IMG/VR virus record: IMGVR_UViG_3300047157_000197
Coordinates: 1-64,000 of that record
DNA: 64,000 nt
Direction: 5' to 3' (one strand)
In this document: piece after piece, positions 3,670 through 39,659 of the stretch
Position numbering within the stretch: position 1 is the first letter of the stretch
Layout of the letters: each line of letters starts with the position of its first letter
Notes under the pieces: model-generated
The model's input: the letters and a program-made list of their open reading frames with translations, nothing else
Database searches by the model: none
Told to the model about the DNA's origin: nothing
Program-made: the position numbers and the translations under genes

Positions 3670-3701
3670 TTAGGATATATCCAAAATAATTCGTATATTA
3701 T
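3670..3701 (+). promoter_or_regulatory. Bacteroidota-type promoter
   Basis: TTAGG-N19-TATATTAT. Confidence 0.7.
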
Positions 3702-4562: not shown

Positions 4563-4770
4563 AAAAACTGATGGTAATAAATATTACCTAAAACAACTCA
4601 ATTCCGAATCAGGTGAATTAGAGTGGATAGAAATTAACTTAGAAAGTAGTACAGAACCAGTAGTAGAATTATCAAAAAATGAGATGATTCTGAATAAACC
4701 TACACATGAGTACTATTTTGAAAGAGAGTTTCCTGATTATGTAACCAAATCAGAGTATGAAGATAAATAA
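4549..4770 (+). CDS. Hypothetical protein
   Basis: 73 aa ORF in tightly packed operon. Confidence 0.55.
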   Translation: MDKYRKTDGNKYYLKQLNSESGELEWIEINLESSTEPVVELSKNEMILNKPTHEYYFEREFPDYVTKSEYEDK

Positions 4771-4784
4771 TCAACTAAAATATC

Positions 4785-4970
4785 ATGGAAAAGAAAGAAT
4801 TAACAACCAACGAATATCGAAATGAGATAGAATTTCAGATAACTAACGCAAGAATAAACGCAGAATCCCCATATAATGATGGTTGGACTCAAGAAGGTTA
4901 CCGAGAAAAGGTGATTTCTTTAGAAAAAAAACTAAAAACAATAGGAAAACAACTAAAACTTAAGTTTTAA
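4785..4970 (+). CDS. Hypothetical protein
   Basis: 61 aa ORF, coupled to next gene. Confidence 0.55.
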   Translation: MEKKELTTNEYRNEIEFQITNARINAESPYNDGWTQEGYREKVISLEKKLKTIGKQLKLKF

Positions 4971-5191
4971 TGCCTCCACAAAATAAGTTTACTGGAAATA
5001 AATTTGAAGATTACCACTATCAGTACCTAGAAAAGTTAATTAAATGGTATGCAACTGATAAAGTTGTACATAGGAACAATAAAATAAAGGTAGAGTGGTT
5101 ATCTGGTTTGATGAAAGAACAATTTTATGATGAACATCAAAGAAAATTTCTAAATAAGATGGTAAAATCTTATAATAATAGAAAAAAATGA
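4970..5191 (+). CDS. Small helical protein, paralog family member 4
   Basis: QFYDEHQRKFLNKMVKSYN motif. Confidence 0.6.
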   Translation: MPPQNKFTGNKFEDYHYQYLEKLIKWYATDKVVHRNNKIKVEWLSGLMKEQFYDEHQRKFLNKMVKSYNNRKK

Positions 5192-6072
5192 GTAAAAAAT
5201 ACTTAATTGCATGTGGAGATTCATTTACAGAAGGTCATGTTTTAGGTAAACCTGCAAGTTGGGCAACTTACGTTGGGCCAAAACTTGGGTTAGAAACCAT
5301 AAACATTGCATGTGGTGGTATGTCAAACGATTGGATTTGTAATACAACCCTTACTTGGTTGATGAAAAACAAAGAAAAAGCTAAAGATTCAGTAGTTATG
5401 ATAGGCTGGACAGAGTTTGGTAGGCAACATACTGTGTATCAACCGATTAATGAATATTGGCCAGGTAACACAAGATGGTCTACTACAATTTCTCCAGCAG
5501 ATTTTATACCTAATTTTGTTGATATTAACGATAATGATATTCCTCAAGCACTAAAAGAGCTAGAAATTAACAAAAAAGCACTGATTCCTTGGTTTGGTTC
5601 CTTTAGTGATTGTCTGTATAAGACGTATCGTTCTATACTTTTTGTTAAAGAATACTGTGAATCTAATAATATTCCTTATATATTCTTTGATATGGTAGAT
5701 AATCATAAGGCAATACTCACCCCATCTATTGAAGGAGATTCACCAGATGGTAAAAATTATAACATTTCAGTAAAAAATAGAGCTAAAAATGAGAAAAATG
5801 AGTGGACATACTTTGATTTAGGACCAGTAAGACACGACCAATATGATTTAATTAATGAAAATATGACCAATTATTTGTTTGATTCTCATTATCATTACAT
5901 TTCTGAGGAAAATTCTTTGTTAGGATTTATGGAAAATTACCCAAATAAAAGTAAAGGAGGCCAGGATGGTGATTATATGAAAGGAAATTCCGGTCATTTA
6001 AATATCGAGGGTTCTAAATGGTTCTCTGAATATGTAGTTAAATGGTATAAAAGTACCCCAAAATTAATATAA
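5188..6072 (+). CDS. SGNH/GDSL-like hydrolase or acyltransferase-fold protein
   Basis: N-terminal ACGDSFTEG, GGMSNDWI and C-terminal GHLNIEG motifs. Confidence 0.65.
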   Translation: MSKKYLIACGDSFTEGHVLGKPASWATYVGPKLGLETINIACGGMSNDWICNTTLTWLMKNKEKAKDSVVMIGWTEFGRQHTVYQPINEYWPGNTRWSTTISPADFIPNFVDINDNDIPQALKELEINKKALIPWFGSFSDCLYKTYRSILFVKEYCESNNIPYIFFDMVDNHKAILTPSIEGDSPDGKNYNISVKNRAKNEKNEWTYFDLGPVRHDQYDLINENMTNYLFDSHYHYISEENSLLGFMENYPNKSKGGQDGDYMKGNSGHLNIEGSKWFSEYVVKWYKSTPKLI

Positions 6073-6077
6073 TAATA

Positions 6078-6085
6078 TATTTATA
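6078..6085 (+). promoter_or_regulatory. Putative late promoter TATTTATA
   Basis: Recurrent motif, 17 nt before ATG 6103. Confidence 0.5.
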
Positions 6086-6102
6086 TTGGTAAAGGTTACA
6101 TC

Positions 6103-7338
6103 ATGGAAGAAGCAGATATAATAAAACAACGATTCAATACTCACGATAGGTCACAAATGAGCTATATGAGTTATGAATCAAAGAAATTTTACCTACAAAC
6201 CACAGCAAAAACGGCATCATCTTGGTCTAATTTAAGAATTGATGATACACCAATTAACCTTAGTTTTAAGATTAATACCCTAAAAGCATACACAGAAGCT
6301 TCTGAAATTGGTGCAGGTGAAGAATCGGATTATGGTAAACAACAAAAAAAGACTATAAAAGATTGGAATTCTCTTATGAATGGTAAATCTTGTAAAAAAG
6401 ATTTCGTTTTCTTTATAAGAAACCCACTAGAAAAGGTAGCTACTGGCTTTGTTCAAGATGTTTTACTAAAAGAAATAAATGAAGATAGTGTAAATTCACT
6501 TCTTTTTCAAAAATATTTATTAGATTTAGGATATTCTAAATATGAGGTTACTAAGTTTTGTAACTTTTATAACCCAAACTTTCACGCTCAAAATAAAAGA
6601 GGGGGTGTAAACTCAAAGAATTTTCAAAATTTTCCTGATGTAAGTAATTTTGGTACTGATAATATCTTTTTACCAATATTCTATCACATGATAGAATCAA
6701 TAGTAGACCATTGGTGTACTGATATACCTAGAGTTATTAATGAAGTCAATCAAGGTCACAAAATGAGTAATTTATTATTTATTTTAAAAATTTTAACATA
6801 TCCACCACATAATGTAGATATATCTAAGATTCATGTAATGGATATAAACAGACAGAATATTGGAGAATCACTAAACAGCAAGTATGGAATGAAAATAGAT
6901 ACAGCTAAAGCTCATTCTAGAGAACCATACTTTAAACATATGGTGTTTGCTGCTTTTAAAAAACACCTACCATTATTAAGTTCTTTTTTAAGTACGGAAC
7001 TTGCGATTTATTCTGAAATAATAAATAAGTTATATCCACTAGAAAACTATACTGAAGAAAAGAAACTACCATCTGGTGTTTTTAATACTGATGAGTATTT
7101 AGTTAATGATAATATACCACAAGATTTTAAACATAGAATTAATTGGACTCCATTAAATCAACATTTAATTTACGAACAATTTAAAGTTAAAAGTGTTAAT
7201 GTAGAAAGTGAGCTTTCCAAGGTTATGCATCTTATAAAATCTGATGGAAAGGGAAGTATAGAAACTGTTCTAAGGGAAAATGAGGATAACGATGCTAGTA
7301 GTAATAGTAGTCAGTTATTGGTTGATAATTTATTTTAA
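6103..7338 (+). CDS. Sulfotransferase-like protein
   Basis: TAKTASS resembles the 5'-PSB loop and FFIRNPLEKVATG the 3'-PB motif. Confidence 0.55.
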   Translation: MEEADIIKQRFNTHDRSQMSYMSYESKKFYLQTTAKTASSWSNLRIDDTPINLSFKINTLKAYTEASEIGAGEESDYGKQQKKTIKDWNSLMNGKSCKKDFVFFIRNPLEKVATGFVQDVLLKEINEDSVNSLLFQKYLLDLGYSKYEVTKFCNFYNPNFHAQNKRGGVNSKNFQNFPDVSNFGTDNIFLPIFYHMIESIVDHWCTDIPRVINEVNQGHKMSNLLFILKILTYPPHNVDISKIHVMDINRQNIGESLNSKYGMKIDTAKAHSREPYFKHMVFAAFKKHLPLLSSFLSTELAIYSEIINKLYPLENYTEEKKLPSGVFNTDEYLVNDNIPQDFKHRINWTPLNQHLIYEQFKVKSVNVESELSKVMHLIKSDGKGSIETVLRENEDNDASSNSSQLLVDNLF

Positions 7339-7428
7339 AGTTTTTTCAACCCCTAACCCCTTTATACAGCTATAACTACTAAGGAAAAATGAAAACGTAA
7401 AAAAAGTTTTAAAAACTTATTAACAATT

Positions 7429-8244
7429 ATGATATTAAATAAAAAATTACTGACCGAACGAGGATACCTAACCTTTAATTTAAAAGAGTTAGATGAAGAA
7501 CTTTATAATGAGTTTAAAAAAACATATACTAAAGAATTTTTAAATAAGAAAATAAAAATATTCAGATTTGATACCTCGATTGATATTAGTAATGGGGATG
7601 TGGTTCCAGATGAATTGTTTACAACACAATTTAAAGTTAAGTACGAGGGCGATACCTATATTAGAGAAGATGATTTTCCTATACGAGATATAAAAGGAAA
7701 GACACATGGCAAGATTGAAGAATTAAAAAAACTTCAAAACTATATAAATGAATTAGATACTCCACCAAATTTTGATAACGTAGGTCAAGAATGGTATTAT
7801 GGGCCATTACGAGTTATTGATAATTATGGAAATATAACCGAACCAGCCAAAACGTTACAAAAACTTTATATAGATGTTATTAAAAATTTATATAAAGATG
7901 ATATCGTAACTATTGAAGATTACCTACCACATACTACACGAAGACAAGACGGTAGTATAGTAGAAGGAACTGATGTTACAATGTATATTAAAAATAATTA
8001 TATCGCATCTCATGCAGATGGAATTGATGGTAATAGATTATGTGTATTATTAATGTATCTTAACGATGATTGGGAAAATGGATATGGTGGAGAAATTGTA
8101 GTGAACGAAGAAATAACAGTACCACCATTATTTGGAAATATTGTAATATTAGATTTCACAGAAAATAATATTGAACATGAAGTTTTAAAAGTACTAAACG
8201 AAAGTTTTGAAAGATATGCAATAATTAAGTTTTTTTACAAATAA
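7429..8244 (+). CDS. 2OG-Fe(II) oxygenase (prolyl-hydroxylase-like)
   Basis: HADG, LLMYLNDDWENGYGGE, distal HEV. Confidence 0.85.
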   Translation: MILNKKLLTERGYLTFNLKELDEELYNEFKKTYTKEFLNKKIKIFRFDTSIDISNGDVVPDELFTTQFKVKYEGDTYIREDDFPIRDIKGKTHGKIEELKKLQNYINELDTPPNFDNVGQEWYYGPLRVIDNYGNITEPAKTLQKLYIDVIKNLYKDDIVTIEDYLPHTTRRQDGSIVEGTDVTMYIKNNYIASHADGIDGNRLCVLLMYLNDDWENGYGGEIVVNEEITVPPLFGNIVILDFTENNIEHEVLKVLNESFERYAIIKFFYK

Positions 8245-8247
8245 CAA

Positions 8248-8508
8248 ATGAGTCAAATTAGAGAAATAATAGAAGGTTGGGCAAATGTAATCAAAGACCA
8301 GTTTGATGCAGTAGACCCAGTCACTAAACAAGTATCAAAAAGAAGATTAGAATTATGTAACGGTTGTCCATTAAGACAAGGTAATGTATGTTCTCCTCAC
8401 ATATGGGGATATGATATAATTTCAGGTGACAAGAAAGTTGGGTGTGGTTGTAATATAAGTGCTAAGACATTATCACCATCATCTAGATGTCCTTTAAACA
8501 AATGGTAA
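8248..8508 (+). CDS. Small Cys-rich, probably metal-binding protein
   Basis: RLELCNGCP...C...CGC...RCPLNKW. Confidence 0.7.
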   Translation: MSQIREIIEGWANVIKDQFDAVDPVTKQVSKRRLELCNGCPLRQGNVCSPHIWGYDIISGDKKVGCGCNISAKTLSPSSRCPLNKW

Positions 8509-8509
8509 A

Positions 8510-8911
8510 ATGAAATTAAAAATATTATTATTATTTGTTTGTTGTAATCTGTTCTCTCAGAAAATCATTATATCTGATGAGTTTACTTGGTACGATGGAA
8601 CTCTAAAAGGAGTAATAAATTATTCATCTATAATGGTTGGAGAGAAAATCTTTGTTGGAGTAGAAAGTGGAACATGGAAAAGTATTGATGGTATCTTGGC
8701 TGCAGAAACAAATATAAATGAGAACTTTTCTATATATTCAGGTATTAGGTTTAAGAAACAAATCAGAGGATACTTTATGAATGTCAACTATAATACAGAT
8801 AGATGTTTATGTAGAAAACAATGGCCTATAAAGTATTATATAGGATTAAAAAGCTTAGATTTAAAAAATGTTAGATTATCAATAGGGATAAGATACGGAT
8901 TAAAAATATGA
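8510..8911 (+). CDS. Secreted beta-rich protein, possible outer-membrane barrel
   Basis: Signal peptide ending LFS|Q; amphipathic strands; C-terminus LSIGIRYGLKI. Confidence 0.5.
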   Translation: MKLKILLLFVCCNLFSQKIIISDEFTWYDGTLKGVINYSSIMVGEKIFVGVESGTWKSIDGILAAETNINENFSIYSGIRFKKQIRGYFMNVNYNTDRCLCRKQWPIKYYIGLKSLDLKNVRLSIGIRYGLKI

Positions 8912-9067
8912 TTATTATGAATAGAGAAAATCGAATGGCTAAATCAGAAACAGCTAGAAACAAAAGAAAAAAAGTTAAAGAAACTTTGGAAACAATAGAA
9001 AAAAGAAGAAGAGCAGATGCTAAGAATCTTAAAAAGAAAATTAATAAACTAAAAAAAAGACATCACG

Positions 9068-9196
9068 ATGGGAAGTAAATTTTTCGGTAATAAACACGAC
9101 AACAAAACAAATAAGAATAAAAAATTAAATCCAAAATCTAACTCGAAAAGTAAGGGTAGTAATATGGGAGTAAGAAAAGTAGGTAGAGGAAGTTAA
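9068..9196 (+). CDS. Small basic peptide, missing from ORF track
   Basis: 42 aa MGSKFFGNKH...VRKVGRGS; stop directly before ATG 9198. Confidence 0.45.
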   Translation: MGSKFFGNKHDNKTNKNKKLNPKSNSKSKGSNMGVRKVGRGS

Positions 9197-9197
9197 G

Positions 9198-9905
9198 ATG
9201 AGTAAAACTTTATTAGTATTCTTTGGAGATTTCAGAACCTTTGATTTGGTAATACCACGTCTAAAAGATTTAGATAAAGTAGATATGATTATATCGACAT
9301 GGAGTACCACAACAAAAAATAATAATATCATTGATATTGATGAGGATGTAATAAGAAAGGTTATACCAAATATAAAACAAATTTTTATTTCAGATAGTAG
9401 TGTTGTAAAACATCACGCTAAGATTGGTAAAGACCACCCACATTGGATAAACACTCGTAGAATGATTTATCATTGGAAACTTGTAACAAACAATATTGAA
9501 AACCTCCACGAATACGATAACATAATATATCAACGATGTGATATAGTATCTAATTGGGAAAATATACTAACTAACGAAATAGAAAAAAATACTCTCTATT
9601 TAAATTATAATAATTCTCCATATGTAACTTCTAATATGTATCCAAACGCACATTGGTGTAATGACTATATCTTTTTCGGAGATGTTACAATTGTAAACAA
9701 ATTTATCAACTCTATAAACGAAGAAGATAAAGATGATGATGGCAACCAAATACCTTTAGATTCTCATAGAACAATATATCGAACTTTAGTTGACAATAAT
9801 ATTAACTACACTAACTACCCCTTACGAGGTTATCTATATAGAGAAGATACTATACCCACTTTCGATAGTGGAGAGTCTTTGGCACTTATTAGTGGTCCTG
9901 AATAA
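9198..9905 (+). CDS. Putative glycosyltransferase-like protein
   Basis: FFGDFRTF, IISTW, YDNIIYQRCD, NDYIFFG pattern seen in phage GT-like proteins. Confidence 0.45.
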   Translation: MSKTLLVFFGDFRTFDLVIPRLKDLDKVDMIISTWSTTTKNNNIIDIDEDVIRKVIPNIKQIFISDSSVVKHHAKIGKDHPHWINTRRMIYHWKLVTNNIENLHEYDNIIYQRCDIVSNWENILTNEIEKNTLYLNYNNSPYVTSNMYPNAHWCNDYIFFGDVTIVNKFINSINEEDKDDDGNQIPLDSHRTIYRTLVDNNINYTNYPLRGYLYREDTIPTFDSGESLALISGPE

Positions 9906-9918
9906 TTTAACTTAAATA

Positions 9919-9950
9919 TTTGGAATTATCATTTTTTTTTCGTATATTTA
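9919..9950 (+). promoter_or_regulatory. Bacteroidota-type promoter
   Basis: TTTGG-N19-TATATTTA. Confidence 0.7.
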
Positions 9951-9956
9951 CATATT

Positions 9957-10175
9957 ATGAATACAATACAACAAATTTGCTTATACTTAGCAATAGGATT
10001 TCTTTGGGCAGGTGTAATAGAGTACACAACTACAAAATGGAAAGTAGGTGGAGAATGGAGTAATGGAGAACGAATAGTTCAAGCTACTCTATGGCCAATA
10101 TTCTTTTTGAAATTCGTAGTTGCTTTTTGGATTTCATTTTTTGGTATGGATAACGATGACACTAATGATTATTAA
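9957..10175 (+). CDS. Small membrane protein
   Basis: Two hydrophobic segments. Confidence 0.6.
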   Translation: MNTIQQICLYLAIGFLWAGVIEYTTTKWKVGGEWSNGERIVQATLWPIFFLKFVVAFWISFFGMDNDDTNDY

Positions 10176-10181
10176 GACTCA

Positions 10182-10532
10182 ATGAAGAAATGTAACGTAT
10201 GTAACAAACAAAAACCTAACCTATGGTTTAAACGAAATAAGAAAACTTGTAGAGGGTGTGAGAGAACGTTCAGCAACTGGTTAATAAGATTACTCGTTAT
10301 AGAGAGAAGATTAACACCTCAAGAAAGATTAGGTAATAGATTAGGGTATATGGGAAGTGCGTTTATAATGATGTCTCCTTACTTACTACCGTATGATAAC
10401 ATGGGAGTGTACACTTATTTAATCGGTGCAATATTATCCCTACCTCAAGTTTGGTTAGCAAAACAATGGAACTTAGTAGTAATCAATTTAAATTTATTAA
10501 TTGGTTATGGATTGTATCTATATAACGTATGA
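10182..10532 (+). CDS. CxxC-CxxC domain fused to a 3-TM membrane module
   Basis: CNVC...CRGC followed by three hydrophobic helices. Confidence 0.55.
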   Translation: MKKCNVCNKQKPNLWFKRNKKTCRGCERTFSNWLIRLLVIERRLTPQERLGNRLGYMGSAFIMMSPYLLPYDNMGVYTYLIGAILSLPQVWLAKQWNLVVINLNLLIGYGLYLYNV

Positions 10533-10709
10533 TATTTATATACAAGAGATTTAAATCAAAAGATTACAACCTCGAATAACATTCATTCAAAGGTAATAAA
10601 AAATTTTTTCGGTAAATCTAATGTATCAAATACTAATAACACTATAACAATTAAGAACGGAAATCATTAATAACTAATAACTCAGTATAACAAAGGATAT
10701 AACACTACT

Positions 10710-11153
10710 ATGGCAGATAACTTTAATTGGGATGATTATTTACCTAACGATGATGAGGACGATAACAACGAAGATGATATGTTTGGAACTACACCCGAAC
10801 CATGGGTAGAAAGACAAATGGAAATTGAAAAAGCTTTGCTATTCTCAGAACTAAGAAGCGGAATACCTATACCCTTATCCCCTCAAGACTGGGATGAGAT
10901 GTGGGAACTAACTACCGAGGATATGAATACAATGACTCAAGTATGGATTAGACACTTTATGCGTGAATCCGATTCTAATAGAGGGAAGTGGAATATAATC
11001 AATACTTATCGCAATGAGTGGTTATCCCAACTTCTACACCATAACGAAGAACAAGAAGAGTATGAACTGTGTTCTCTTATTAACGAAATCTTACTTTGGT
11101 CTAACAATCAACGGACGTGGAAAAAGATATCGGATGCAATGATAGAAAAATAG
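10710..11153 (+). CDS. Acidic hypothetical protein
   Basis: 147 aa; C-terminal EEQEEYELC helix, possibly UVR-like. Confidence 0.6.
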   Translation: MADNFNWDDYLPNDDEDDNNEDDMFGTTPEPWVERQMEIEKALLFSELRSGIPIPLSPQDWDEMWELTTEDMNTMTQVWIRHFMRESDSNRGKWNIINTYRNEWLSQLLHHNEEQEEYELCSLINEILLWSNNQRTWKKISDAMIEK

Positions 11154-11164
11154 GGTATGCATAA

Positions 11165-11172
11165 TATTTATA
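11165..11172 (+). promoter_or_regulatory. Putative late promoter TATTTATA
   Basis: Upstream of radical SAM gene. Confidence 0.4.
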
Positions 11173-11246
11173 ATACTATCAATAAAAAAGAGGAAGAAAA
11201 TTTCCGACTAAAAAATTTTAAAAAATCGACACGATTTTAGTTTTAT

Positions 11247-13055
11247 ATGAATGAAGTTGAAAAAAGGATAAAACATCAAATAGATAACAATACTGGTCAA
11301 GTTGATTTAAAGATTGATTTGGTTAAGTATATGCAACAATCTGAACGTGCCAAACAATACGAGGAATCGGTGAAGGAAAAGGGTGAGGAATTCAAACACC
11401 AATTTCGATATGAGGTAATCGGTGAACAAGATGCACTTCTTTTTCAAGTTCCCAATATAAACGAATCGGGTTATTACGCGGGTGTGGTTGCCTTAAAATC
11501 ATATGTAGATAAGTTCCATTCGGATTTGAACGTTGAGATTATCGACCCCATTATAGATTACTTCTATTTAAACCCACCTAACAAAGAAGGTGATTTCTTT
11601 CAAATGTTTAATACCTACGCAAGACAAGGTGAGTGGGAAGAACTTTTAAAGTTTCAAGAGATACATGATATGTGCGAAGGATTCATTTTCAAATACATAG
11701 ATAAGTGTAATCCCGCCTTTATTGGTTTAAGTATCATTGATGGTAATATAGATGCATCTCTCGCAATTTCAAGTTTAATAAAAAAGAAATACCCTCATAT
11801 TAAAATACTAATGGGTGGAAATGGAATCGAGGTTTTAGATTTCGGTATGTTACCTAACTCAAAATATACTACAATAAATTATGATTTTGTAGATGTATTT
11901 TCAAGAGGTGATGGTGAAGCAACATTTGTTGAAATTCTTAAATGTGATATGAGTGATGATGCTCTTTCAAAGATTAAAGGTCTTGTTTGGAGAAAATCAA
12001 CAGGTGGGTATGTAGATACTCCAATGGAATTGACTCACAATCCAACGAGAGAAAACATAGATATGAATTCATTACCAATGCCTGATTATTCATCATTGGA
12101 ACAAAATTATTATTACCACTCTACATATCAATATTCAGTTCCTTTAGTTTTAAGTAGAGGTTGTCCATATCGTTGTACCTTTTGTTCAGTACCAGAATTT
12201 ATACCTGTATTTAGATATAGAACACACGAGAGTGTTTTAGAAGAAATGGAGTATTGGATAAACAAAGGAAGAAAGGGATTCTTCATGCACGATAGTATTA
12301 TCAATGGTAATCCAAAATGGTTAATGACCTTTTGTGAAATGATAATAGAAAGGTGGGGAGAATATCAAATTGATTTCGGTGGTAATATGAGATTACAAAA
12401 TGTAATGAGAAACTTAGATACAATGTGGTTATTTAGAAGAGCAGGATTATCCAAGATGATAACTGGCTTTGAATCTGCATCTGAACCTGTTTTGAAACAT
12501 ATGAAGAAATATACTTCTATGGAAGGTGTACGAGAAATCTTTGATAATGTAAGAGCAATAAACAAAGTACTACAAAAGGAAAGACCTCATGCACCAAAGA
12601 TGCAATTTGCAATGCAACTTATTATTGGGTACTTAAATGAAACACGAGTAGATTTTCAACGAACAGTAGATTTCGTAAAAGAATATAATGATTGTATGTC
12701 AGAGATACTTACTTGTTCTGCATTTCTACTTCATCAAACCCTACAAGATAAATGGGTAAAAGAAGGAGAACCTCTTATTCAACATAGAAACTCTGTTATA
12801 TTTGATACAATGTATAACACCACACAGAACAGATTAGATTGGTTAAATGAAATAGAGGTGGTTTTTAAAAATTACAACTTACCATATTCCATATACAATA
12901 GAGGAATCTTTTATGAACTTATAAAAGAAAACGAAAATGAACAAGTTCATTACACATGGATTGATGGAGAATTATTCTTTGGCCCAAACGGAGAAACTCC
13001 TCACATAAAACAAATCCAAGAAAAACTTGGTATAGTAAAAAAACAATTATTTTAA
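11247..13055 (+). CDS. B12-binding radical SAM protein (class B methyltransferase-like)
   Basis: SRGCPYRCTFC (CxxxCxxC), cobalamin-binding-like FIGLS...ILMGG and RGDGE segments. Confidence 0.88.
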   Translation: MNEVEKRIKHQIDNNTGQVDLKIDLVKYMQQSERAKQYEESVKEKGEEFKHQFRYEVIGEQDALLFQVPNINESGYYAGVVALKSYVDKFHSDLNVEIIDPIIDYFYLNPPNKEGDFFQMFNTYARQGEWEELLKFQEIHDMCEGFIFKYIDKCNPAFIGLSIIDGNIDASLAISSLIKKKYPHIKILMGGNGIEVLDFGMLPNSKYTTINYDFVDVFSRGDGEATFVEILKCDMSDDALSKIKGLVWRKSTGGYVDTPMELTHNPTRENIDMNSLPMPDYSSLEQNYYYHSTYQYSVPLVLSRGCPYRCTFCSVPEFIPVFRYRTHESVLEEMEYWINKGRKGFFMHDSIINGNPKWLMTFCEMIIERWGEYQIDFGGNMRLQNVMRNLDTMWLFRRAGLSKMITGFESASEPVLKHMKKYTSMEGVREIFDNVRAINKVLQKERPHAPKMQFAMQLIIGYLNETRVDFQRTVDFVKEYNDCMSEILTCSAFLLHQTLQDKWVKEGEPLIQHRNSVIFDTMYNTTQNRLDWLNEIEVVFKNYNLPYSIYNRGIFYELIKENENEQVHYTWIDGELFFGPNGETPHIKQIQEKLGIVKKQLF

Positions 13056-13421
13056 ATGGCAGAAAAATTCAATTGGTTATTTTTAGGTTACGCAGTAATA
13101 TTAATAACTCTAGGTCAGGTAGGAGCTTACCTACAACACAATTATCAATTTTTAGATAAAAGATTTCCACCAGAGTGGTGGGGGTGGTATGTTTGTGCAA
13201 TACCAATCACATGGTTCTTTTTAAAAGGAACCTATTATGGTGTAAACGCATTTGATGGAGATTTATGGCCGAATCGTTTTATAGGATTTGTTATAGGTAT
13301 TGTATCATATAGTATCTTAACTTCATATATGTTTAAACAAGATATTACTCCAAAAATATTTACACAAATAGTATTGTGTTTTGTAATACTAATGGTACAA
13401 TTCTTATGGAAAGGAAAATAA
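13056..13421 (+). CDS. 4-TM membrane protein (DMT/SMR-like size)
   Basis: Four hydrophobic helices. Confidence 0.6.
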   Translation: MAEKFNWLFLGYAVILITLGQVGAYLQHNYQFLDKRFPPEWWGWYVCAIPITWFFLKGTYYGVNAFDGDLWPNRFIGFVIGIVSYSILTSYMFKQDITPKIFTQIVLCFVILMVQFLWKGK

Positions 13422-14729
13422 GCTTAAATAATTTATTTAAAACAAAAATCAATAATAAGAGAATTCTATTATTAGAACCCGGTTGTGATTTACAGAACCT
13501 TGGTTTTTGTGGATTAAACTTTTTCCAAACAACCAAGACTTCAACATTAACAAATGTAACTAATATAGAAAGTTTCAAAAACACTCATTGGGATTATATT
13601 ATTTCTCATGTATTTCATATAAGAAATATGAGAAGAGCTGATGCTTCGTTATTTGAAAAATACAATATAACTTGTGATACACTTGTACTCGATGAGATAG
13701 GTGAAGGGTTTTCACTAGATGGTGATGCAAAACGAGTTTTTATTGATGTAGAATTTGATAAAAAAGTAAAAGCAAAGAAATGTAAATGGCTAGCCACCAT
13801 TTTATGATTATTCCGATATTCAACCACGATATCCAAATGTAGAATTTTTCTCTGAGAAATTCACAACTCCATTGTTATTCTGTGGAAAAACAAATCATAT
13901 GATACATGGTGGTTTGGGAGAAGTTAATGGTGAAGTTGTTAAAGTACATCAGTTACAATTGGGTAATCACATAGTAGCCGGTTTAAAATGGAAACCCGAA
14001 GAAAAAGAAAAACTCTTTATGTCATTAAATAATGATGTTAGACCACATCGTAGTTTACTAATACATTATTTAACAAACGAAAACCTAATAGAAAAGGGTT
14101 ATGTATCTTACCTCAACCCACCATCTGATTTACAGATGAAACTAACAGATGATGTATATATAGAAAAATTAAATATTAAAAGACACACACTTCCATGGGA
14201 AGGGGATACTAATAATATGAATAGATTTGGTATTCAAAATATAGTAGCAGAAAAAACATACATTGATATTGTTACTGAATCAAGTACTGGACATTGGCCA
14301 TTTAAAACTGAAAAATGTTTAAAACCATTTTACAATTTACAATTCCCTATGATTATTGGTCATGGTGGAATTATGAAAGAATTAAGAGAATTAGGATTTG
14401 ATTTATTTGATGATATAATTAATCACGAATATGATACACACAAACATCCAAAATACATAAAATCCTCAATCCAAGATATAGAATTAGATGGTTGGAATGA
14501 TAATTTAAGAATACCATTATTAGTTGAGGAATTAAAAAGATTATCAACTCTTAATATTAAAAAAATCTATGAAGATAATAAAGATAGATTAATAAAAAAC
14601 CAAGAACTTGTTTGGAAACTAACCATTGAAAATAACGATATGTTATACGCGTTAGGAGATTTTGTTTTTGATAACGCTATAGAATACTTTGATACTCCAG
14701 TTGAACACTTAAAAAAGATTTATTTATGA
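13406..14729 (+). pseudogene. Probably one ~440-codon gene (GT-like phage family) split by a +1 frameshift near 13800
   Basis: ORF 13406-13807 continues in the +1 frame (YDYSDIQPRYPNVEFFSEKFTTPLLFCGK...) into ORF 13872-14729, which has IVTES, KTEKCLKPF and LGFDLFDDIINHEYD. Confidence 0.55.
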
Positions 14730-14944
14730 AACAGATAGATTTACATGGATTAAGACATGATGCTGCAGTAGATAGAGCAGAAGATTTTGTATTAATGGAA
14801 TCACATAACTCTATGTTTGAATGTAGAATAATTGTAGGTAATTCCTCTACGATGACAAAGAGAGTTACTGATATGTTAGAGAGTCATCAATTTAAATATT
14901 ATATTCCAAGTTGGAATGTAGGAGAAATAATAGTTTCAAATTAA
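14726..14944 (+). CDS. Stand-alone Smr-domain-like protein
   Basis: IDLHGL start and RIIVGNS motif. Confidence 0.7.
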   Translation: MKQIDLHGLRHDAAVDRAEDFVLMESHNSMFECRIIVGNSSTMTKRVTDMLESHQFKYYIPSWNVGEIIVSN

Positions 14945-14993: not shown

Positions 14994-15182
14994 ATGAGAA
15001 AATTAACATACAAAATAACAGAAGTATCTAATACTTATGGATTAGAGTTTATTACCGATAGAAGTGATAAATGGACTAAAGAACAATATACAAGAAATAG
15101 AAAACCATTAACAATGGAATTAATTAGTGATGAAACCACAAAAGAAAAAGAACCAATATCAAGAAAAATTAAGTTGGGATGA
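14994..15182 (+). CDS. Hypothetical protein
   Basis: 62 aa, first gene after promoter. Confidence 0.6.
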   Translation: MRKLTYKITEVSNTYGLEFITDRSDKWTKEQYTRNRKPLTMELISDETTKEKEPISRKIKLG

Positions 15183-15183
15183 T

Positions 15184-15837: not shown

Positions 15838-15884
15838 CAACTATTGTTCATTGAAATATTGTTTAATTAAATAAAAATAAAATT

Positions 15885-20098: not shown

Positions 20099-20644
20099 AT
20101 GGTTTTACAAAAAATATTATTTTCTAAAGAGGAATGTAATAAAATATTATCTTTTTCTAAAAGTTTTAAACAATCAACTGTTACCACTACATCTACATCT
20201 AATTCCCCCCACAAATTCACAATCTCTTATAACAAAGAACATAGAGATTCACTAACATCTAATGTTGATTGTCTTGAAATTGGAAAAATTATATTACCTA
20301 AAATCTCTTTATTGGATGATACTATAATATCAACACCTACAATAAACATGAATATAGTAAAGTATGAAGAAGGTCATTACTTTAAAAAACACCAAGATAG
20401 AAGTAGTGATAATTATTTTGAAAGAAAAAAAACATTAGTAGTACAACTATCCGAAGAAGATACATATAAAGGTGGTTCTTTACGAGTTTGGGAAAATGAA
20501 AAAAATCCATATATAACTGCTTCAAAGAAAATAGGAAACACAATTATATTTGATTCTGGTCATTATCATGAAGTTACTACATTGGAAGTAGGAACTCGAT
20601 ATGCATTGATATGTTGGTTAGAACCTAATAATTTAAAAAAGTAG
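20099..20644 (+). CDS. 2OG-Fe(II) oxygenase
   Basis: HQD, LVVQLSEEDTYKGG, HEV, RYALICW. Confidence 0.88.
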   Translation: MVLQKILFSKEECNKILSFSKSFKQSTVTTTSTSNSPHKFTISYNKEHRDSLTSNVDCLEIGKIILPKISLLDDTIISTPTINMNIVKYEEGHYFKKHQDRSSDNYFERKKTLVVQLSEEDTYKGGSLRVWENEKNPYITASKKIGNTIIFDSGHYHEVTTLEVGTRYALICWLEPNNLKK

Positions 20645-23205: not shown

Positions 23206-23934
23206 ATGGATATTTTGAAATATTGGAATAAAATTACATTTGATATAACATCTTTCAAATGGTTTTTATCCGAGAGAAAAAATAAAAGTTTTAAAACAAG
23301 TGGTTCTGATAGTACCACTAACAATCTTTATACTTACAACGACTTAGGATTTAGAGGTGATTCACTTCCTCTTGTTGGTAAAAAGTTAATGGCAGTTGGT
23401 TGTTCTCACACAGAAGGAATTGGTGTAAACGATAATCAAACCTGGCCTCACTACTTATCTAAACTCTTAAACTATTCACACATCAACTTTGGATTTACTG
23501 GTAGGAGTAATGATTATATAGCTAGATGTATCTTAACCTTTACCGAAGAAATAAAACCTGATTTAGTTTGTATAATGTATTCTTATCCAGAAAGACGAGA
23601 ATATTACACAAAAGAAAACGGAGTTGAACCATTTCACCCAAACCCTTGGGGATGGTTTTCAGAATCAAAAAATACAAATTATTTTAAATCTAAATTACAA
23701 CTATCGAATGATAATGAGGATTTTATAAATTGGTATAAAAATCATTTACTAATTACAAACTTTTTACAGAACAAGAACATTCCTTATATTTGGAATGGAA
23801 TATTTATTAACAATGAGTATGATGATGGTTTTAGATTTGATGGTGATTATAATATACCATATAACAACCACGCAACTCCAAACGAAAATAAAGATTACGC
23901 AAATAAATTATTTAATTTTATAAAGAAAAAATAA
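23206..23934 (+). CDS. SGNH/GDSL-like protein
   Basis: AVGCSHTEG, GRSNDYIAR, C-terminal NHATP. Confidence 0.65.
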   Translation: MDILKYWNKITFDITSFKWFLSERKNKSFKTSGSDSTTNNLYTYNDLGFRGDSLPLVGKKLMAVGCSHTEGIGVNDNQTWPHYLSKLLNYSHINFGFTGRSNDYIARCILTFTEEIKPDLVCIMYSYPERREYYTKENGVEPFHPNPWGWFSESKNTNYFKSKLQLSNDNEDFINWYKNHLLITNFLQNKNIPYIWNGIFINNEYDDGFRFDGDYNIPYNNHATPNENKDYANKLFNFIKKK

Positions 23935-26303: not shown

Positions 26304-26918
26304 TTGAAAGTATTAATATTAGGTATATCAAGAAGTGGAACCACTTCATTACTAAAGGGATTTAAACACCAAAAGTATATAACAGTTGGGGAACCTTTTA
26401 ATAATGCTATTAATTTAAATAGAGATTATCCACCCGTAGAACTTATTGATAATGATAATATTTGTGTAAAAACCCTTTGCAATCAAATACCTAATAATCT
26501 CGATATATCATTTTATGCTTTTATTAAAAAATTTATTAAAGAGTTTGATAAAATTATTTTACTCGATAGAAAAAATAGCATAGAACATGAAGAAAGTTTT
26601 ATGCATATGTATTGGAGATTATCCATTAATCAACTTGCTCATACAAAATGGAGTAGTGGTGTAGTACCAAATGATTTTAAAGAGAATTTTTATAAAGACG
26701 GTGGAATGAATCGTTTATATTTACAAAAAGAACAATTAAAAAAAATATCAAGCTACATTAATACTCCAATAACATGGTATGAAGAATTATATGGCGAAGA
26801 TAGAATACAATCACTAAAGGTTATAACCAAATGGGATTTAGACTTAGATTCAAACCTTTTAAACAATTATCTCAATCCAAAACATAAACTTAAACAAGTT
26901 AATAAAACCATAATATAA
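26304..26918 (+). CDS. Sulfotransferase-family protein
   Basis: GISRSGTT, GEPFN, LLDRKN, WYEELY; TTG start. Confidence 0.7.
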   Translation: MKVLILGISRSGTTSLLKGFKHQKYITVGEPFNNAINLNRDYPPVELIDNDNICVKTLCNQIPNNLDISFYAFIKKFIKEFDKIILLDRKNSIEHEESFMHMYWRLSINQLAHTKWSSGVVPNDFKENFYKDGGMNRLYLQKEQLKKISSYINTPITWYEELYGEDRIQSLKVITKWDLDLDSNLLNNYLNPKHKLKQVNKTII

Positions 26919-38168: not shown

Positions 38169-39134
38169 ATGATTAGAACAGCAGAATGTGTATCACCGAT
38201 GCACCCAGACAAGATGTGTGATAGAATATCAGACACATTATTAGATTTACATTTAGAACAAGACCCAAACTCACGAGTAGCAATTGAAACTTGTGGTGGT
38301 ATGGGAGAAGTTTATATCACAGGAGAAGTTACTTCAAATGCAGTAGTAACGAGAAATGATATTGTAAAGGTAGTTCATAGTGTAACTACCGATGATACGA
38401 TTGAAGTTATCATTAACATCAACTCACAATCACCAGAGATTGCAAATGGAGTAGATACTGGTGGAGCAGGTGACCAAGGAATTATGATTGGTTATGCTTG
38501 TAGAGATAATAAAGAATTTTTACCACAAGAATATTTCTTATCAAGAGAACTAAACAAGTATGTATTTAGTAAATATCCGTATGATGGTAAAACTCAAGTT
38601 ACTATGAATGGTAACTCACTTAGAGTTGTATGTTCATTTCAGAAAGCACCAACAAAAGAATTACAACAATTGGTATATGAATATTTTGAAGATTATCCAG
38701 AATATCAAATTGAAGCATTACATTGTAATCCTGCTGGAGAGTGGAACATTGGTGGATTTACTGCTGATGCTGGATTAACTGGTAGAAAACTTGCAGTAGA
38801 TAATTATGGACCGAGAGTTCCACTTGGTGGTGGAGCATTTAGTGGTAAGGATTCTACTAAGGTTGATAGAAGTGCAGCTTATATGGGAAGAAGAATAGCA
38901 GTAGATATATTAGAACAAAGACCAGAGGTACAAGAAGTAATGGTTCAACTTGCTTATGCAATTGGATATGACCAACCTCTACAAGCAACTGCTATCGTTG
39001 ATGGAGAACACGAATTTATCAAGGGATATGATTTATCCCCTAAAGGAATAATTGATTTCTTAGAACTAAGAAAACCAATATTTGGAGAAACCGCAGGGTT
39101 TGGACACATGGGTGCAGGATTTAAATGGAAATAA
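38169..39134 (+). CDS. metK: S-adenosylmethionine synthetase
   Basis: HPDKMCD, GAGDQG, DGKTQV, DAGLTGRK, GGGAFSGKD...KVDRS. Confidence 0.95.
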   Translation: MIRTAECVSPMHPDKMCDRISDTLLDLHLEQDPNSRVAIETCGGMGEVYITGEVTSNAVVTRNDIVKVVHSVTTDDTIEVIININSQSPEIANGVDTGGAGDQGIMIGYACRDNKEFLPQEYFLSRELNKYVFSKYPYDGKTQVTMNGNSLRVVCSFQKAPTKELQQLVYEYFEDYPEYQIEALHCNPAGEWNIGGFTADAGLTGRKLAVDNYGPRVPLGGGAFSGKDSTKVDRSAAYMGRRIAVDILEQRPEVQEVMVQLAYAIGYDQPLQATAIVDGEHEFIKGYDLSPKGIIDFLELRKPIFGETAGFGHMGAGFKWK

Positions 39135-39185: not shown

Positions 39186-39659
39186 ATGAGTAAAAAATAT
39201 AAAGTAATATTAATTAGTGGTGGATTTGACCCTGTACATAAAGGTCATATCGAATGTATCCAAAATGCTAAGAAGTTAGCAGATGAAGTTTGGATAGGAC
39301 TTAACAACGATAGTTGGTTAAGAAGAAAAAAAGGTAAATCTTTTATGAAAGAAGGAGAACGAAAGTTTATAATGGAATCACTAAGAGATGTAGATTATGT
39401 TTATGTAATGAATCCACTTATACATGGAGATGATACAGCAATTGATTTTATTGACCATGCAAGAAAAAAGTTTGTAAATCAAAATGGTGATTTACCAAAA
39501 GGTGTAATGGCATTTGGTAATGGTGGAGATAGAACAGAAACAACTACACCAGAGAATGATGTATGTAATTCATACGGAATAGAATCAGTATGGGGATTGG
39601 GTAAGAAGATTCAATCATCATCTTGGTTATTAGAAAAATATTTAAATATAGCAGAATAA
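39186..39659 (+). CDS. Cytidylyltransferase-family nucleotidyltransferase (TagD/RfaE-like)
   Basis: SGGFDPVHKGH (HxGH), GLNND, FGNGGDR, QSSS. Confidence 0.85.
   Translation: MSKKYKVILISGGFDPVHKGHIECIQNAKKLADEVWIGLNNDSWLRRKKGKSFMKEGERKFIMESLRDVDYVYVMNPLIHGDDTAIDFIDHARKKFVNQNGDLPKGVMAFGNGGDRTETTTPENDVCNSYGIESVWGLGKKIQSSSWLLEKYLNIAE

What the first reader, a model, noticed from the sequence alone, without database searches (positions are those of the whole stretch)
5188..14729. Large tailoring-enzyme set suggesting phage-made decorated glycans or hypermodification
Seen: SGNH-like (5188), sulfotransferase-like (6103), 2OG-Fe(II) (7429), GT-like (9198), B12 radical SAM (11247) and a split GT-like gene (13406). 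Second copies lie elsewhere (2OG 20099, SGNH 23206, sulfotransferase 26304), along with a cytidylyltransferase (39186), MetK (38169) and a NodU/TobZ carbamoyltransferase (42764). Known: these families acylate, sulfate, hydroxylate, methylate and carbamoylate sugars and other small acceptors. The late-type TATTTATA motif precedes 6103 and 11247. Inference: the product is made late and decorates the virion (or DNA) rather than supporting early metabolism.
Basis: partly seen in the sequence, partly recalled or inferred. Interest (0 to 1): 0.62.

Follow-up and report, generated by a model that had tools for sequence, protein, structure and literature searches.

The report
Jumbo phage glycan-tailoring gene block
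A 274-kb marine phage, probably of Flavobacteriales, carries a conserved block of sugar-modifying enzyme genes that belongs to an unusually large phage-encoded glycan toolkit, and about half of the listed genes share their promoter type with the virion genes, which points to a phage-made decorated glycan rather than modified DNA.

Summary
Confirmed: two 2OG-Fe(II) oxygenases, a cobalamin-type radical SAM enzyme, MetK, a cytidylyltransferase and a carbamoyltransferase. The "split GT" is one 450-aa GT-B glycosyltransferase broken here by a single extra C at 13794/5; it is intact in a ~99% identical variant and in relatives. The two SGNH calls rest on motifs, weak Pfam hits and paralogy. Gene 6103 is only weakly supported as a distant Sulfotransfer_2 relative. 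Gene 26304 has one motif and is not a copy of 6103. Gene 9198 could not be shown to be a GT.

The genome (~274 kb, redundant ends) also holds a nucleotide-sugar island outside the window, four more GT-B paralogues, two GT7-lectin fusions, two further radical SAM genes and a true sulfotransferase. I found no known entry enzyme for DNA hypermodification, and ThyA is canonical.

There are two promoter-like classes. One is bipartite and host-like and precedes replication genes. The other, tATATTTATAta, precedes virion genes and also 6103-9905 and 11247-14944. SGNH 5188, 26304, MetK, the cytidylyltransferase and the carbamoyltransferase lie in early-type units.

Verdict: the glycan reading is supported, DNA hypermodification is unlikely, and "late" holds for only part of the set. 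The acceptor (virion or host envelope) is unresolved.

The parts
3691..3699 (+). Class E (early, host-like) promoter-like site TCGTATATT. It heads the run of small overlapping ORFs 3902-5191 and, by start/stop overlap, SGNH gene 5188.
5188..6072 (+). SGNH/GDSL-like esterase or acyltransferase (294 aa). Weak DUF6071 hit. Motifs: block I CGDSFTEG, GGMSND, NSGHLNIEG.
   Evidence: paralogues at 23206 and at genome 266217
6077..6085 (+). Class L (virion-type) promoter-like site ATATTTATA, 17 nt before the ATG of 6103. Conserved at the same place in relatives.
6103..7338 (+). 411-aa protein, a distant Sulfotransfer_2-like candidate. TAKTASSW is 5'-PSB-like and RNPLEKVATGF is 3'-PB-like.
   Evidence: the AF2 model failed
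7429..8244 (+). 2OG-Fe(II) oxygenase of the prolyl-4-hydroxylase type (271 aa). HxD and distal H are present. Missing in relative L125.
8248..8508 (+). 86-aa Cys-rich small protein, conserved in relatives. Function unknown.
8510..8911 (+). 133-aa protein with an N-terminal signal-like hydrophobic segment. Sits at another position in relatives.
9198..9905 (+). 235-aa conserved protein of unknown fold.
9940..9948 (+). Class E promoter-like site before the two small genes 9957 (72 aa, two hydrophobic segments) and 10182 (116 aa, N-terminal CxxC..CxxC).
10532..10540 (+). Class L promoter-like site upstream of the acidic 147-aa gene 10710-11153.
11164..11172 (+). Class L promoter-like site 74 nt before the radical SAM gene.
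11247..13055 (+). Cobalamin-type (class B) radical SAM enzyme, methyltransferase-like, 602 aa, CPYRCTFC motif.
   Evidence: paralogue at genome 163386-165395
13056..13421 (+). 121-aa small membrane protein with 3-4 hydrophobic helices. Abuts the radical SAM gene and overlaps the GT-B gene. Kept next to the GT-B gene down to 46% GT identity.
13376..14729 (+). GT-B fold glycosyltransferase gene (450 aa when intact). In this record an extra C at 13794/13795 splits it into 13376-13807 and 13794/13872-14729.
14726..14944 (+). 72-aa Smr-domain protein overlapping the GT-B stop codon. Last gene of this L unit.
20099..20644 (+). Second 2OG-Fe(II) oxygenase (181 aa), in the L unit that starts at 18750.
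23206..23934 (+). Second SGNH-like gene (242 aa), in the L unit that starts at 20684.
26304..26918 (+). 204-aa protein with an RSGTTSL P-loop-like motif. Sulfotransferase status untested beyond the motif. Lies in an E unit.
38169..39134 (+). MetK-like S-adenosylmethionine synthetase (242 bits, below the equivalog cut-off of 309). In the E unit with UvdE, a helicase and ThyA.
39186..39659 (+). Cytidylyl/adenylyltransferase (157 aa). Best model is rfaE domain II (heptose-1-P adenylyltransferase). Directly preceded by a class E site at 39157.
42764..44482 (+). NodU/TobZ-type carbamoyltransferase (572 aa), in the E unit that starts at 41089.

Best explanation
The region is part of a phage-encoded glycan synthesis and tailoring toolkit. 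It belongs to a ~274-kb marine jumbo myovirus whose host is probably a member of the Flavobacteriales.

Inside the finding there are two transcription units headed by the virion-type promoter tATATTTATAta.
- Unit 1 (6103-9905) encodes a distant sulfotransferase-like protein, a P4H-type 2OG oxygenase, small Cys-rich and secreted-looking proteins, and an unknown 235-aa enzyme.
- Unit 2 (11247-14944) encodes a cobalamin-type radical SAM methylase-like enzyme, a small multi-pass membrane protein, a GT-B glycosyltransferase and an Smr protein.

Inferred mechanism, step by step:
1. Nucleotide sugars are made by the phage's own island at 84-98 kb and by the HldE-like, DegT and cytidylyltransferase genes.
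2. The GT-B enzymes, five paralogues in all, transfer these sugars onto an acceptor.
3. The product is then tailored by sulfation, radical C-methylation (with SAM from the phage MetK), hydroxylation, O-acylation or de-acylation (SGNH) and carbamoylation.
4. Because the core transferases and tailoring enzymes share their promoter class with the virion genes, the most likely acceptor is a virion protein, giving a glycan coat as in giant viruses and mycobacteriophages.

Shown here: the gene families, the GT-B fold, the conserved synteny, the two promoter classes and the genome-wide sugar inventory. Inferred, not shown: that the genes act on one product, the chemistry of each step, and the acceptor.
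For: Families.

GT-B gene:
- AF2 model with pLDDT 91.4.
- All top structural matches are GT-B glycosyltransferases: T4 BGT Z 12.7, H. pylori alpha1,3-FucT Z 12.4, phage HY126 GT Z 11.2.
- Three of its four paralogues lie inside the nucleotide-sugar island, next to SDR epimerase/dehydratases, an RmlC-like epimerase and TPP E1-like genes.

Conservation:
- The SGNH / sulfoT-like / 223-237-aa / rSAM / TM / GT-B / Smr order is kept in relatives at 64-85% GT identity.
- The TM plus GT-B pair is kept at 46%.
- Still more distant GT-B homologues sit beside TylF/CmcI-type sugar O-methyltransferase-like genes.

Promoters:
- Class L: 44 of 65 copies lie in the 7.4% non-coding DNA. It precedes the tail fibre, baseplate hub, adaptor and baseplate block, and also 6103, 10710 and 11247.
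- Class L sites are positionally conserved in relatives.
- Class E precedes primase, DnaB, PolB and a nuclease.

Selection: both halves of the split GT show dN/dS of about 0.30.
Against:
- All genes are co-directional and no terminators were found in the region. Early transcripts could therefore read through, and promoter class is only a proxy for timing.
- Five of the twelve listed genes lie in early-type units.
- Synteny at 64-85% identity may simply reflect whole-genome collinearity. At 46% only the TM plus GT-B pair stays together.
- The 2OG gene is dispensable in one relative.
- 6103 is only weakly linked to sulfotransferases, and 9198 has no assignment.
- The small membrane protein, the signal-peptide protein and the HldE-like genes fit an envelope acceptor as well as a virion one.
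- I found no clear acceptor signature in virion proteins, only two six-triplet collagen-like runs and two S/T-rich stretches.
Confidence: 0.42

Rival explanations
1. Host-envelope remodelling. The same enzymes modify a lipid-linked or surface polysaccharide of the infected cell (LPS, capsule or S-layer glycan). This could block superinfection, prevent progeny from re-adsorbing to lysing cells, or change the cell surface during the long infection of a jumbo phage. The small 121-aa membrane protein would anchor the GT-B enzyme or help to flip a lipid-linked sugar.
For: - The TM121 plus GT-B pair is conserved and the two genes overlap.
- Further small membrane proteins lie at 9957 and 10182, and a signal-peptide protein at 8510.
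- HldE-like kinase and adenylyltransferase halves and a LegC/PseC-like DegT resemble LPS and capsule precursor pathways.
- From my own knowledge: temperate phages are known to modify O-antigen with a small flippase plus GTs (gtrABC).
Against: - TM121 gave no Pfam family hit at E <= 0.01 when scanned against all of Pfam-A, which includes GtrA and the SMR family.
- The complex prediction for GT-B plus TM121 gave no verdict.
- The core units carry the virion-type promoter, which is late for a protective surface change.
- The phage shows no sign of lysogeny in the parts I annotated.
Confidence: 0.27
2. No single pathway. The genes are a loose collection of independently acting auxiliary genes of the kind common in marine myoviruses (2OG oxygenases, carbamoyltransferase, PhoH, MetK). 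They have different substrates, including proteins or peptides, for example P4H-type hydroxylation or radical SAM methylation of a peptide. Their proximity reflects genome collinearity only.
For: - The region is a mosaic of alternating E and L units.
- One relative lacks the 2OG gene, and a more distant one replaces the rSAM with an unrelated 586-aa gene.
- Carbamoyltransferases occur in many cyanophage and pelagiphage records.
- The rSAM also scores with RiPP C-methyltransferase models.
- A Cys-rich 86-aa ORF lies nearby.
Against: - The density of sugar-specific families across the genome is hard to explain without a glycan product.
- The order from SGNH to Smr is kept in all relatives down to 64% identity.
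Confidence: 0.22
3. DNA hypermodification. The GT-B enzyme, structurally closest to T4 beta- and alpha-glucosyltransferases, glycosylates a modified base in phage DNA, and the other enzymes decorate it further.
For: The top structural hits include the T4 BGT and AGT DNA glucosyltransferases (Z 12.7 and 10.9). Phage DNA glycosylation with diverse glycans is documented (10.1101/2023.12.21.572611; PMC13326640).
Against: - The BGT hit is tied within one Z unit with GT10 fucosyltransferase (12.4), so the fold does not discriminate.
- The only thymidylate-synthase homologue found is a canonical ThyA above the equivalog cut-off. It has L143, D169 and N177, so it is not the N177D or D169N type that makes hm- or ho-pyrimidines.
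- No C5 DNA methyltransferase, TET/JBP or TGT/DpdA family was found in the genome.
- GT-B paralogues sit inside a deoxy-sugar island.
Confidence: 0.06

Closest known systems
Giant-virus autonomous glycosylation machinery (chloroviruses, Mimivirus fibril glycans; reviewed in PMC9614988)
   Same: The virus encodes nucleotide-sugar synthesis, several glycosyltransferases and tailoring enzymes for unusual sugars. The product decorates the virion. The genes are scattered in several clusters.
   Different: This is a tailed bacteriophage of about 274 kb. No glycan has been observed. The set includes a cobalamin-type radical SAM enzyme and sulfotransferase-like genes. I know of no report of these in giant-virus glycan pathways, but I did not check that here.
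Mycobacteriophage virion glycosylation (Freeman et al. 2023, as cited in PMC12619734)
   Same: Phage-encoded glycosyltransferases decorate capsid and tail proteins, and the genes are expressed with structural genes.
   Different: Those phages carry about two GTs and use host sugars. Here the toolkit is far larger and includes sugar biosynthesis. Acceptor signatures were not found.
T4 beta-glucosyltransferase and alpha-glucosyltransferase, and phage DNA glycosylation systems (PMC13326640; 10.1101/2023.12.21.572611)
   Same: GT-B fold; best structural matches (Z 12.7 and 10.9).
   Different: Sequence identity is only 7-9%. No hydroxymethyl- or hydroxy-pyrimidine synthase, DNA C5-methyltransferase or TET partner is present. 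The promoter is of the virion type.
GT10 alpha1,3-fucosyltransferases (H. pylori FucT, human FUT9)
   Same: GT-B fold with Z 12.4 and 10.0 and the highest identity among the hits (12-13%). From memory, the family's conserved YIDVVTESS..PFKTEKxxKPF stretch resembles the GT10 FxxxFENS..YxTEK motif.
   Different: The Pfam Glyco_transf_10 model did not pick this gene up in a genome scan at E <= 10. The Atlas feature score is only 0.79. The donor sugar is unknown.
Class B (cobalamin-dependent) radical SAM methyltransferases such as TokK and CysS, and sugar C-methylases such as GenK (the last from my own knowledge)
   Same: An N-terminal B12-like domain plus a CxxxCxxC radical SAM core. TokK and CysS are the best PDB sequence hits.
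   Different: All curated subfamily models score far below their cut-offs (best is BchE, 110 of 481 bits). There is a roughly 140-aa N-terminal extension. The substrate is unknown. Such enzymes are very rare in phage records: 4 weak hits in 50,697 records.
Auxiliary-gene sets of marine T4-like cyanophages and pelagiphages (2OG oxygenases, carbamoyltransferase, PhoH)
   Same: The same families are present. The carbamoyltransferase is 29-31% identical to those of HTVC008M and the S-SSM5-type phages listed.
   Different: The phage is not T4-like. Its baseplate is nearest to Microcystis phage Mel-JY01, a 484-kb uncultured phage and Flavobacterium immuto phages. The sugar toolkit is much larger.

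Membership tests
SGNH/GDSL hydrolase superfamily (5188, 23206) | Block I GDS(L) with the nucleophilic Ser near the N-terminus | tested here: met
   5188 has CGDSFTEG at residues 9-16; 23206 has VGCSHTEG
SGNH/GDSL hydrolase superfamily (5188, 23206) | Block III GxND and block V DxxH | tested here: inconclusive
   GGMSND and GRSND are present. Block V in 5188 reads NSGHLNIEG, so the His is present but Asp is replaced by Asn.
SGNH/GDSL hydrolase superfamily (5188, 23206) | A curated family model above its cut-off | tested here: not met
   DUF6071 scores 19.3 bits against a cut-off of 27 for both genes. A neighbouring paralogue in a relative reaches 43.7 bits.
Sulfotransferase, Sulfotransfer_2 type (6103) | 5'-PSB loop (PKxGxT/S) and 3'-PB (RNPxxRxxS) motifs in the right order | tested here: inconclusive
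   The family consensus is TxPKxASSW ... RNPxxxFxSG. The window's own protein has TAKTASSW and RNPLEKVATGF, that is P>A, R>K and S>T.
Sulfotransferase, Sulfotransfer_2 type (6103) | Significant sequence or profile similarity to the family | tested here: inconclusive
   No Pfam hit. hhalign against a 25-sequence alignment (24 Flavobacteriales Sulfotransfer_2 proteins plus the phage's own) gives E 4.6e-4 and probability 33%, with controls at 0.14-0.44. The Atlas feature lead scores 0.93.
Sulfotransferase, Sulfotransfer_2 type (6103) | Sulfotransferase fold | not testable with these tools
Sulfotransferase (26304) | Family model hit or paralogy to a known member | tested here: not met
   No hit to PF03567, PF13469 or PF00685. 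No similarity to 6103 or to the phage's true Sulfotransfer_2. Only the RSGTTSL motif is present.
2OG-Fe(II) oxygenase (7429, 20099) | Pfam model above cut-off, and the HxD...H iron triad | tested here: met
   48.8 and 58.6 bits against a cut-off of 27. SHADG and IEHEV are seen in 7429.
Class B cobalamin-dependent radical SAM (11247) | CxxxCxxC cluster motif and a Radical_SAM domain | tested here: met
   CPYRCTFC is present; PF04055 scores 43.7 bits against a cut-off of 29.5.
Class B cobalamin-dependent radical SAM (11247) | N-terminal B12-binding domain | tested here: inconclusive
   PF02310 scores 20.9 bits against a cut-off of 32.1. The best NCBIfam and PDB matches are all B12-rSAM enzymes (BchE, RiPP C-MT, PhpK, TokK, CysS) and span the region upstream of the core.
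GT-B glycosyltransferase (13376-14729) | Two Rossmann-like domains matching solved GT-B enzymes over most of the length | tested here: met
   Model pLDDT is 91.4. All listed VIA rows are glycosyltransferases (nearly all GT-B), aligned over residues ~26-435, top Z 12.7.
GT10 fucosyltransferase (13376-14729) | Pfam Glyco_transf_10 model hit | tested here: not met
   A genome scan at E <= 10 reported only another locus, 83464-83616.
Glycosyltransferase (9198) | Any family, profile or fold match to a GT | tested here: not met
   No hit in Pfam, NCBIfam or PHROGs, or in PDB by single sequence or profile. The fold was not modelled.
T4-type late promoter | TATAAATA on the coding strand about 10 nt before the transcript start | tested here: not met
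   The motif on the coding strand is TATTTATA, the reverse complement.
Phage late promoter class (functional sense) | A motif enriched in intergenic DNA, upstream of virion genes and absent before replication genes | tested here: met
   44 of 65 copies are intergenic. It precedes the tail fibre, hub, adaptor and baseplate block. Replication genes carry the other motif. Timing itself was not measured.
Known phage DNA hypermodification systems | An entry enzyme: a thymidylate synthase homologue with N177D or D169N, or a C5-MT plus TET pair, or DpdA/TGT | tested here: not met
   ThyA is canonical, with D169, N177 and L143, and has no paralogue. PF00145, PF12851 and PF01702 are absent.
HldE (ADP-heptose synthesis) | rfaE domain I kinase and domain II adenylyltransferase above cut-off | tested here: not met
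   These are the best models for L007:6644-7387 (123 of 345 bits) and for 39186 (64.5 of 181.5 bits), so the genes are HldE-like only.

The most novel reading that the evidence does not exclude
This lineage of marine Bacteroidota jumbo phages autonomously builds a complex, sulfated and radical-SAM C-methylated (possibly also carbamoylated and branched-chain) glycan and attaches it to its own virion late in infection. That would be a bacteriophage counterpart of giant-virus glycan coats, and it would use a cobalamin-dependent radical SAM enzyme in a viral glycan pathway.
Probability: 0.22. Interest if true: 0.8.

Novelty: new variant of a known kind. Interest (0 to 1): 0.55.

Why it matters
Virus-encoded glycosylation is well described for giant eukaryotic viruses and has been shown for a few mycobacteriophages. 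It has not been described, as far as I could find, for marine phages with toolkits of this size. If the product coats the virion, it would affect adsorption, grazing, aggregation and immune or lectin recognition of abundant marine phages. It would also add sulfation and cobalamin-dependent radical methylation to viral glycan chemistry.

The two cleanly separated promoter classes give a practical handle for predicting early and late genes in this uncultured phage lineage. One is a host-like bipartite class resembling the Bacteroidota -33/-7 type. The other is the phage-specific tATATTTATAta. They also support a Bacteroidota host.

Tried and rejected
- Megablast of the region against phage records found nothing.
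- The search for related loci with the rSAM in viral contigs found nothing.
- AF2 of the 6103 family with 12 sequences failed (pLDDT 39.8), so no fold test was possible for it.
- Profiles of 6103 (A1, A5), 9198 (A4) and the GT-B family (A3) against PDB sequences gave nothing significant.
- hhalign of A1 against the single phage sulfotransferase gave nothing.
- The 1.84-billion-protein profile search for 6103 returned 64 relatives, but the ten I looked up carry no informative name.
- The WavE idea for 9198 could not be tested; the model rang nowhere.
- Sulfotransfer_1 and _3 models did not hit 26304.
- The sigma-70 and terminator consensus scan of the region was at chance level.
- The Rfam scan found only the four tRNAs and no riboswitch before the B12 enzyme.
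- Complex prediction for GT-B plus the 121-aa membrane protein gave no verdict (score 0.00). It counts neither for nor against binding.
Neither expression nor the reality of the frameshift could be checked in reads.
- A search for acceptor signatures found only two six-triplet collagen-like runs and two S/T-rich stretches, which is not informative.
- Literature searches found no description of this gene set.
- 'Moraphages' (PMC12619734) are a different, mainly freshwater lineage. I did not test membership.

Full report
**What the window is.** The window is the first 64 kb of a 275,970-bp IMG/VR virus record. It has about 30% G+C and nearly all genes lie on the + strand. The first ~2 kb of the record recur at its end at 96-99% identity. 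The genome is therefore effectively closed at about 274 kb, and the genes at 262-272 kb are the upstream neighbours of the finding. The baseplate wedge protein is 36-42% identical to those of Microcystis phage Mel-JY01, a 484-kb uncultured phage and the Flavobacterium immuto phages. This makes it a jumbo myovirus, but not a T4-like one.

Several hints point to a Flavobacteriales host:
- The best cellular matches of its ThyA are Flavobacteriaceae and Schleiferiaceae MAGs, at 59-63% identity.
- Distant relatives carry a Por_Secre_tail (T9SS) protein nearby.
- One promoter class resembles the Bacteroidota -33/-7 type, as described below.

Curated models confirm these genes:
- The two 2OG-Fe(II) oxygenases.
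- The radical SAM enzyme. It has a CPYRCTFC motif and a sub-threshold B12-binding hit. Its best family and PDB matches are all cobalamin-dependent enzymes (BchE, RiPP C-methyltransferase, PhpK, TokK, CysS), though far below the subfamily cut-offs.
- MetK, the cytidylyltransferase and the carbamoyltransferase.

The two SGNH-like genes have only weak DUF6071 hits. They are mutual paralogues (E 3e-9) and carry GDS/GCS and GxSND motifs. Gene 5188 also has an xxHLNxEG block V in which the usual Asp is Asn.

Gene 6103 has no hit in any curated library. I collected homologues and built a 42-sequence alignment. Its consensus shows TxPKxASSW and RNPxxxFxSG. These resemble the two PAPS-binding motifs of Sulfotransfer_2. 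I then compared this profile with a 25-sequence alignment made of 24 Sulfotransfer_2 proteins from Flavobacteriales genomes plus the phage's own sulfotransferase. The two motifs aligned co-linearly at E 4.6e-4 and probability 33%. Unrelated control alignments gave 0.14-0.44. This is specific but weak support. The structure model failed.

Gene 26304 shows only an RSGTTSL motif. It is similar neither to 6103 nor to any sulfotransferase model. Gene 9198 has a conserved family of its own but no detectable relation to glycosyltransferases.

**The split gene.** Relatives encode a single 440-463-aa protein where the window has 13376-13807 plus 13872-14729. A DNA alignment shows one extra C at window position 13794/13795. 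The second frame is open from exactly that point. A ~99% identical intact 450-aa protein (P0017, 73 cluster members) exists in public data. Both halves have dN/dS of about 0.30 against a relative. The break is therefore very recent, confined to this strain, or an assembly error.

An AlphaFold model built on 33 homologues is confident (pLDDT 91.4). Its structural neighbours are GT-B glycosyltransferases throughout: T4 beta-glucosyltransferase (Z 12.7), H. pylori alpha1,3-fucosyltransferase (Z 12.4, the highest identity at 12-13%), phage HY126 GT and T4 alpha-glucosyltransferase. The fold does not say which donor or acceptor is used.

- Upstream, across the record join, lie a PfkB kinase whose best model is HldE domain I, further GDSL-like genes, a third 2OG oxygenase, a short LegC/PseC-like DegT aminotransferase and a DUF6071 protein. 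The window's cytidylyltransferase best matches HldE domain II.
- A true Sulfotransfer_2 gene lies 389 nt past the window end.
- At 84-98 kb there is a sugar island. It holds two GT7-type transferases fused to ConA-like lectin domains, another radical SAM gene, an RmlC-like epimerase, TPP E1-like subunits, three SDR epimerase/dehydratases and three paralogues of the window's GT-B.
- A GT2 gene with a fourth SDR lies near 208 kb.
- A second B12-type rSAM paralogue lies at 163 kb.

The finding is thus one part of a genome-wide glycan toolkit.

**Conservation.**
- Metagenomic relatives with 64-85% GT identity keep the order SGNH, sulfoT-like, (2OG), 86 aa, 223-237 aa, 71, 116, 138-147, rSAM, TM121, GT-B, Smr. 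One of them lacks the 2OG gene.
- At 46% GT identity only the 121-aa membrane protein (55% identical) and the GT-B stay together. The gene upstream of them there is unrelated to the rSAM.
- At 32-37% identity the GT-B sits beside TylF/CmcI-type methyltransferase-like genes.

**Promoters and timing.** TATTTATA is not over-represented in the raw window count. Genome-wide, however, 44 of its 65 + strand copies fall in the 7.4% non-coding DNA, usually 17-35 nt before a start codon. The extended consensus is tATATTTATAta, with no upstream element. It precedes the tail fibre, baseplate hub, head-tail adaptor and the baseplate block.

A second motif is even more intergenic: 27 of its 29 copies of TCGTATAT. 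Its consensus is aATTnGG-N17-TCGTATATTt, and 25 of 28 sites have the upstream element. It precedes primase, DnaB helicase, family-B polymerase and a PD-(D/E)XK nuclease. It resembles the TTTG...TAnnTTTG promoters of Flavobacterium and Bacteroides (PMC7641319). Both motifs are positionally conserved in relatives. I call them class E (early, host-like) and class L (virion-type).

In the window, the genes divide as follows:
- Class L units: 6103-9905, 10710, 11247-14944, 18776-20644 (with 2OG 20099) and 20727 onwards (with SGNH 23206).
- Class E units: SGNH 5188, 26304, MetK (together with UvdE, a helicase and ThyA), the cytidylyltransferase and the carbamoyltransferase.

Two corrections apply. 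It is the reverse complement of T4's TATAAATA, not the same element. Only seven of the twelve listed genes fall under it. Timing itself is inferred, because the genes are co-directional and I found no terminators in the region.

**DNA versus glycan.** The only thymidylate-synthase homologue exceeds the ThyA equivalog cut-offs. It has L143, D169 and N177. These are the canonical states, as opposed to the N177D or D169N variants that make hydroxymethyl- or hydroxy-pyrimidines (PMC13326640). No C5 DNA methyltransferase, TET/JBP or TGT/DpdA family was found. GT-B paralogues also sit among deoxy-sugar genes. DNA hypermodification by any known route is therefore unlikely, though an unknown route is not excluded.

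**Conclusion.**
- Most likely (0.42): a phage-made, tailored glycan whose core transferases and modifiers are produced with the virion genes and that decorates virion proteins.
- Rival (0.27): the same chemistry aimed at the host envelope. The small membrane protein paired with the GT-B, the other membrane and signal-peptide ORFs and the HldE-like genes favour this.
- Rival (0.22): an unlinked collection of auxiliary genes.
- Rival (0.06): DNA hypermodification.

The complex prediction for GT-B with the membrane protein gave no verdict and is not used as evidence.

Noticed in passing
window 4-2024 and genome 273,875-275,970: The record's two ends are redundant at 96-99% identity with a small indel, although IMG/VR classes it as linear with no end repeats. 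The genome is effectively closed at about 274 kb, and genes at 262-272 kb are the upstream neighbours of the finding.
   Followed up: yes
genome-wide; in the window at 864, 1978, 3691, 9940, 14966, 25318, 28151, 32226, 39157, 41089: A bipartite promoter-like motif, aATTnGG-N17-TCGTATATTt, with 27 of its 29 core copies intergenic. It precedes primase, DnaB, PolB and a nuclease, and resembles the Bacteroidota -33/-7 (TTTG..TAnnTTTG) promoter type. This suggests early transcription by host RNA polymerase and a Bacteroidota host.
   Followed up: yes
genome 84,178-98,179 (L009:178-14179): A nucleotide-sugar island: two GT7-type transferases fused to Laminin_G_3 lectin-like domains, a 482-aa radical SAM gene, an RmlC-like epimerase, TPP E1 alpha/beta-like subunits, three SDR epimerase/dehydratases and three paralogues of the window's GT-B.
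   Followed up: partly
genome 64,389-64,970 (L006:1492-2073): A bona fide Sulfotransfer_2 gene (193 aa, 50 bits, above the cut-off) lies just past the window end.
   Followed up: partly
genome 98,306-103,513 (L009:14306-19513): A 1735-aa protein with an N-terminal cytidylyltransferase-like region and a tRNA nucleotidyltransferase (CCA-adding type) domain, preceded by the class L motif.
   Followed up: no
window 20727-23021: A 764-aa protein with a Hint/intein-like module at residues ~460-660 and an unannotated N-terminal half. It lies under a class L site. Homologues of 793 and 596 aa occur in relatives.
   Followed up: no
window 15766-17402: Four tRNA genes (Glu-TTC, Ser-TGA, Ala-TGC and one whose anticodon ARAGORN could not assign but which Rfam scores as a tRNA at 56 bits). 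They are interleaved with a DUF6580 membrane-protein gene (15179-15787).
   Followed up: no
window 8510-8911 versus L002:6403-6803: The 133-aa signal-peptide protein gene sits between the 2OG gene and 9198 in this genome. In the closest relatives it lies about 6 kb further upstream, a small local rearrangement.
   Followed up: no
window 37156-38061: A canonical thymidylate synthase (L143, D169, N177), 59-63% identical to those of Flavobacteriales MAGs. It sits directly upstream of MetK in an early-type unit with UvdE (32267), a flavodoxin-like protein (34128) and an SF2 helicase (34709).
   Followed up: yes
genome 163,386-165,395; 185,172-185,783; 253,549-254,052; 241,602-242,690: Further paralogues outside the window: a second B12-type radical SAM gene, two paralogues of 26304 and a fifth GT-B family member.
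   Followed up: no
window 26924-28129 and 39884-40507: An FG-GAP repeat protein (401 aa) directly after 26304, and a peptide deformylase after the cytidylyltransferase.
   Followed up: no
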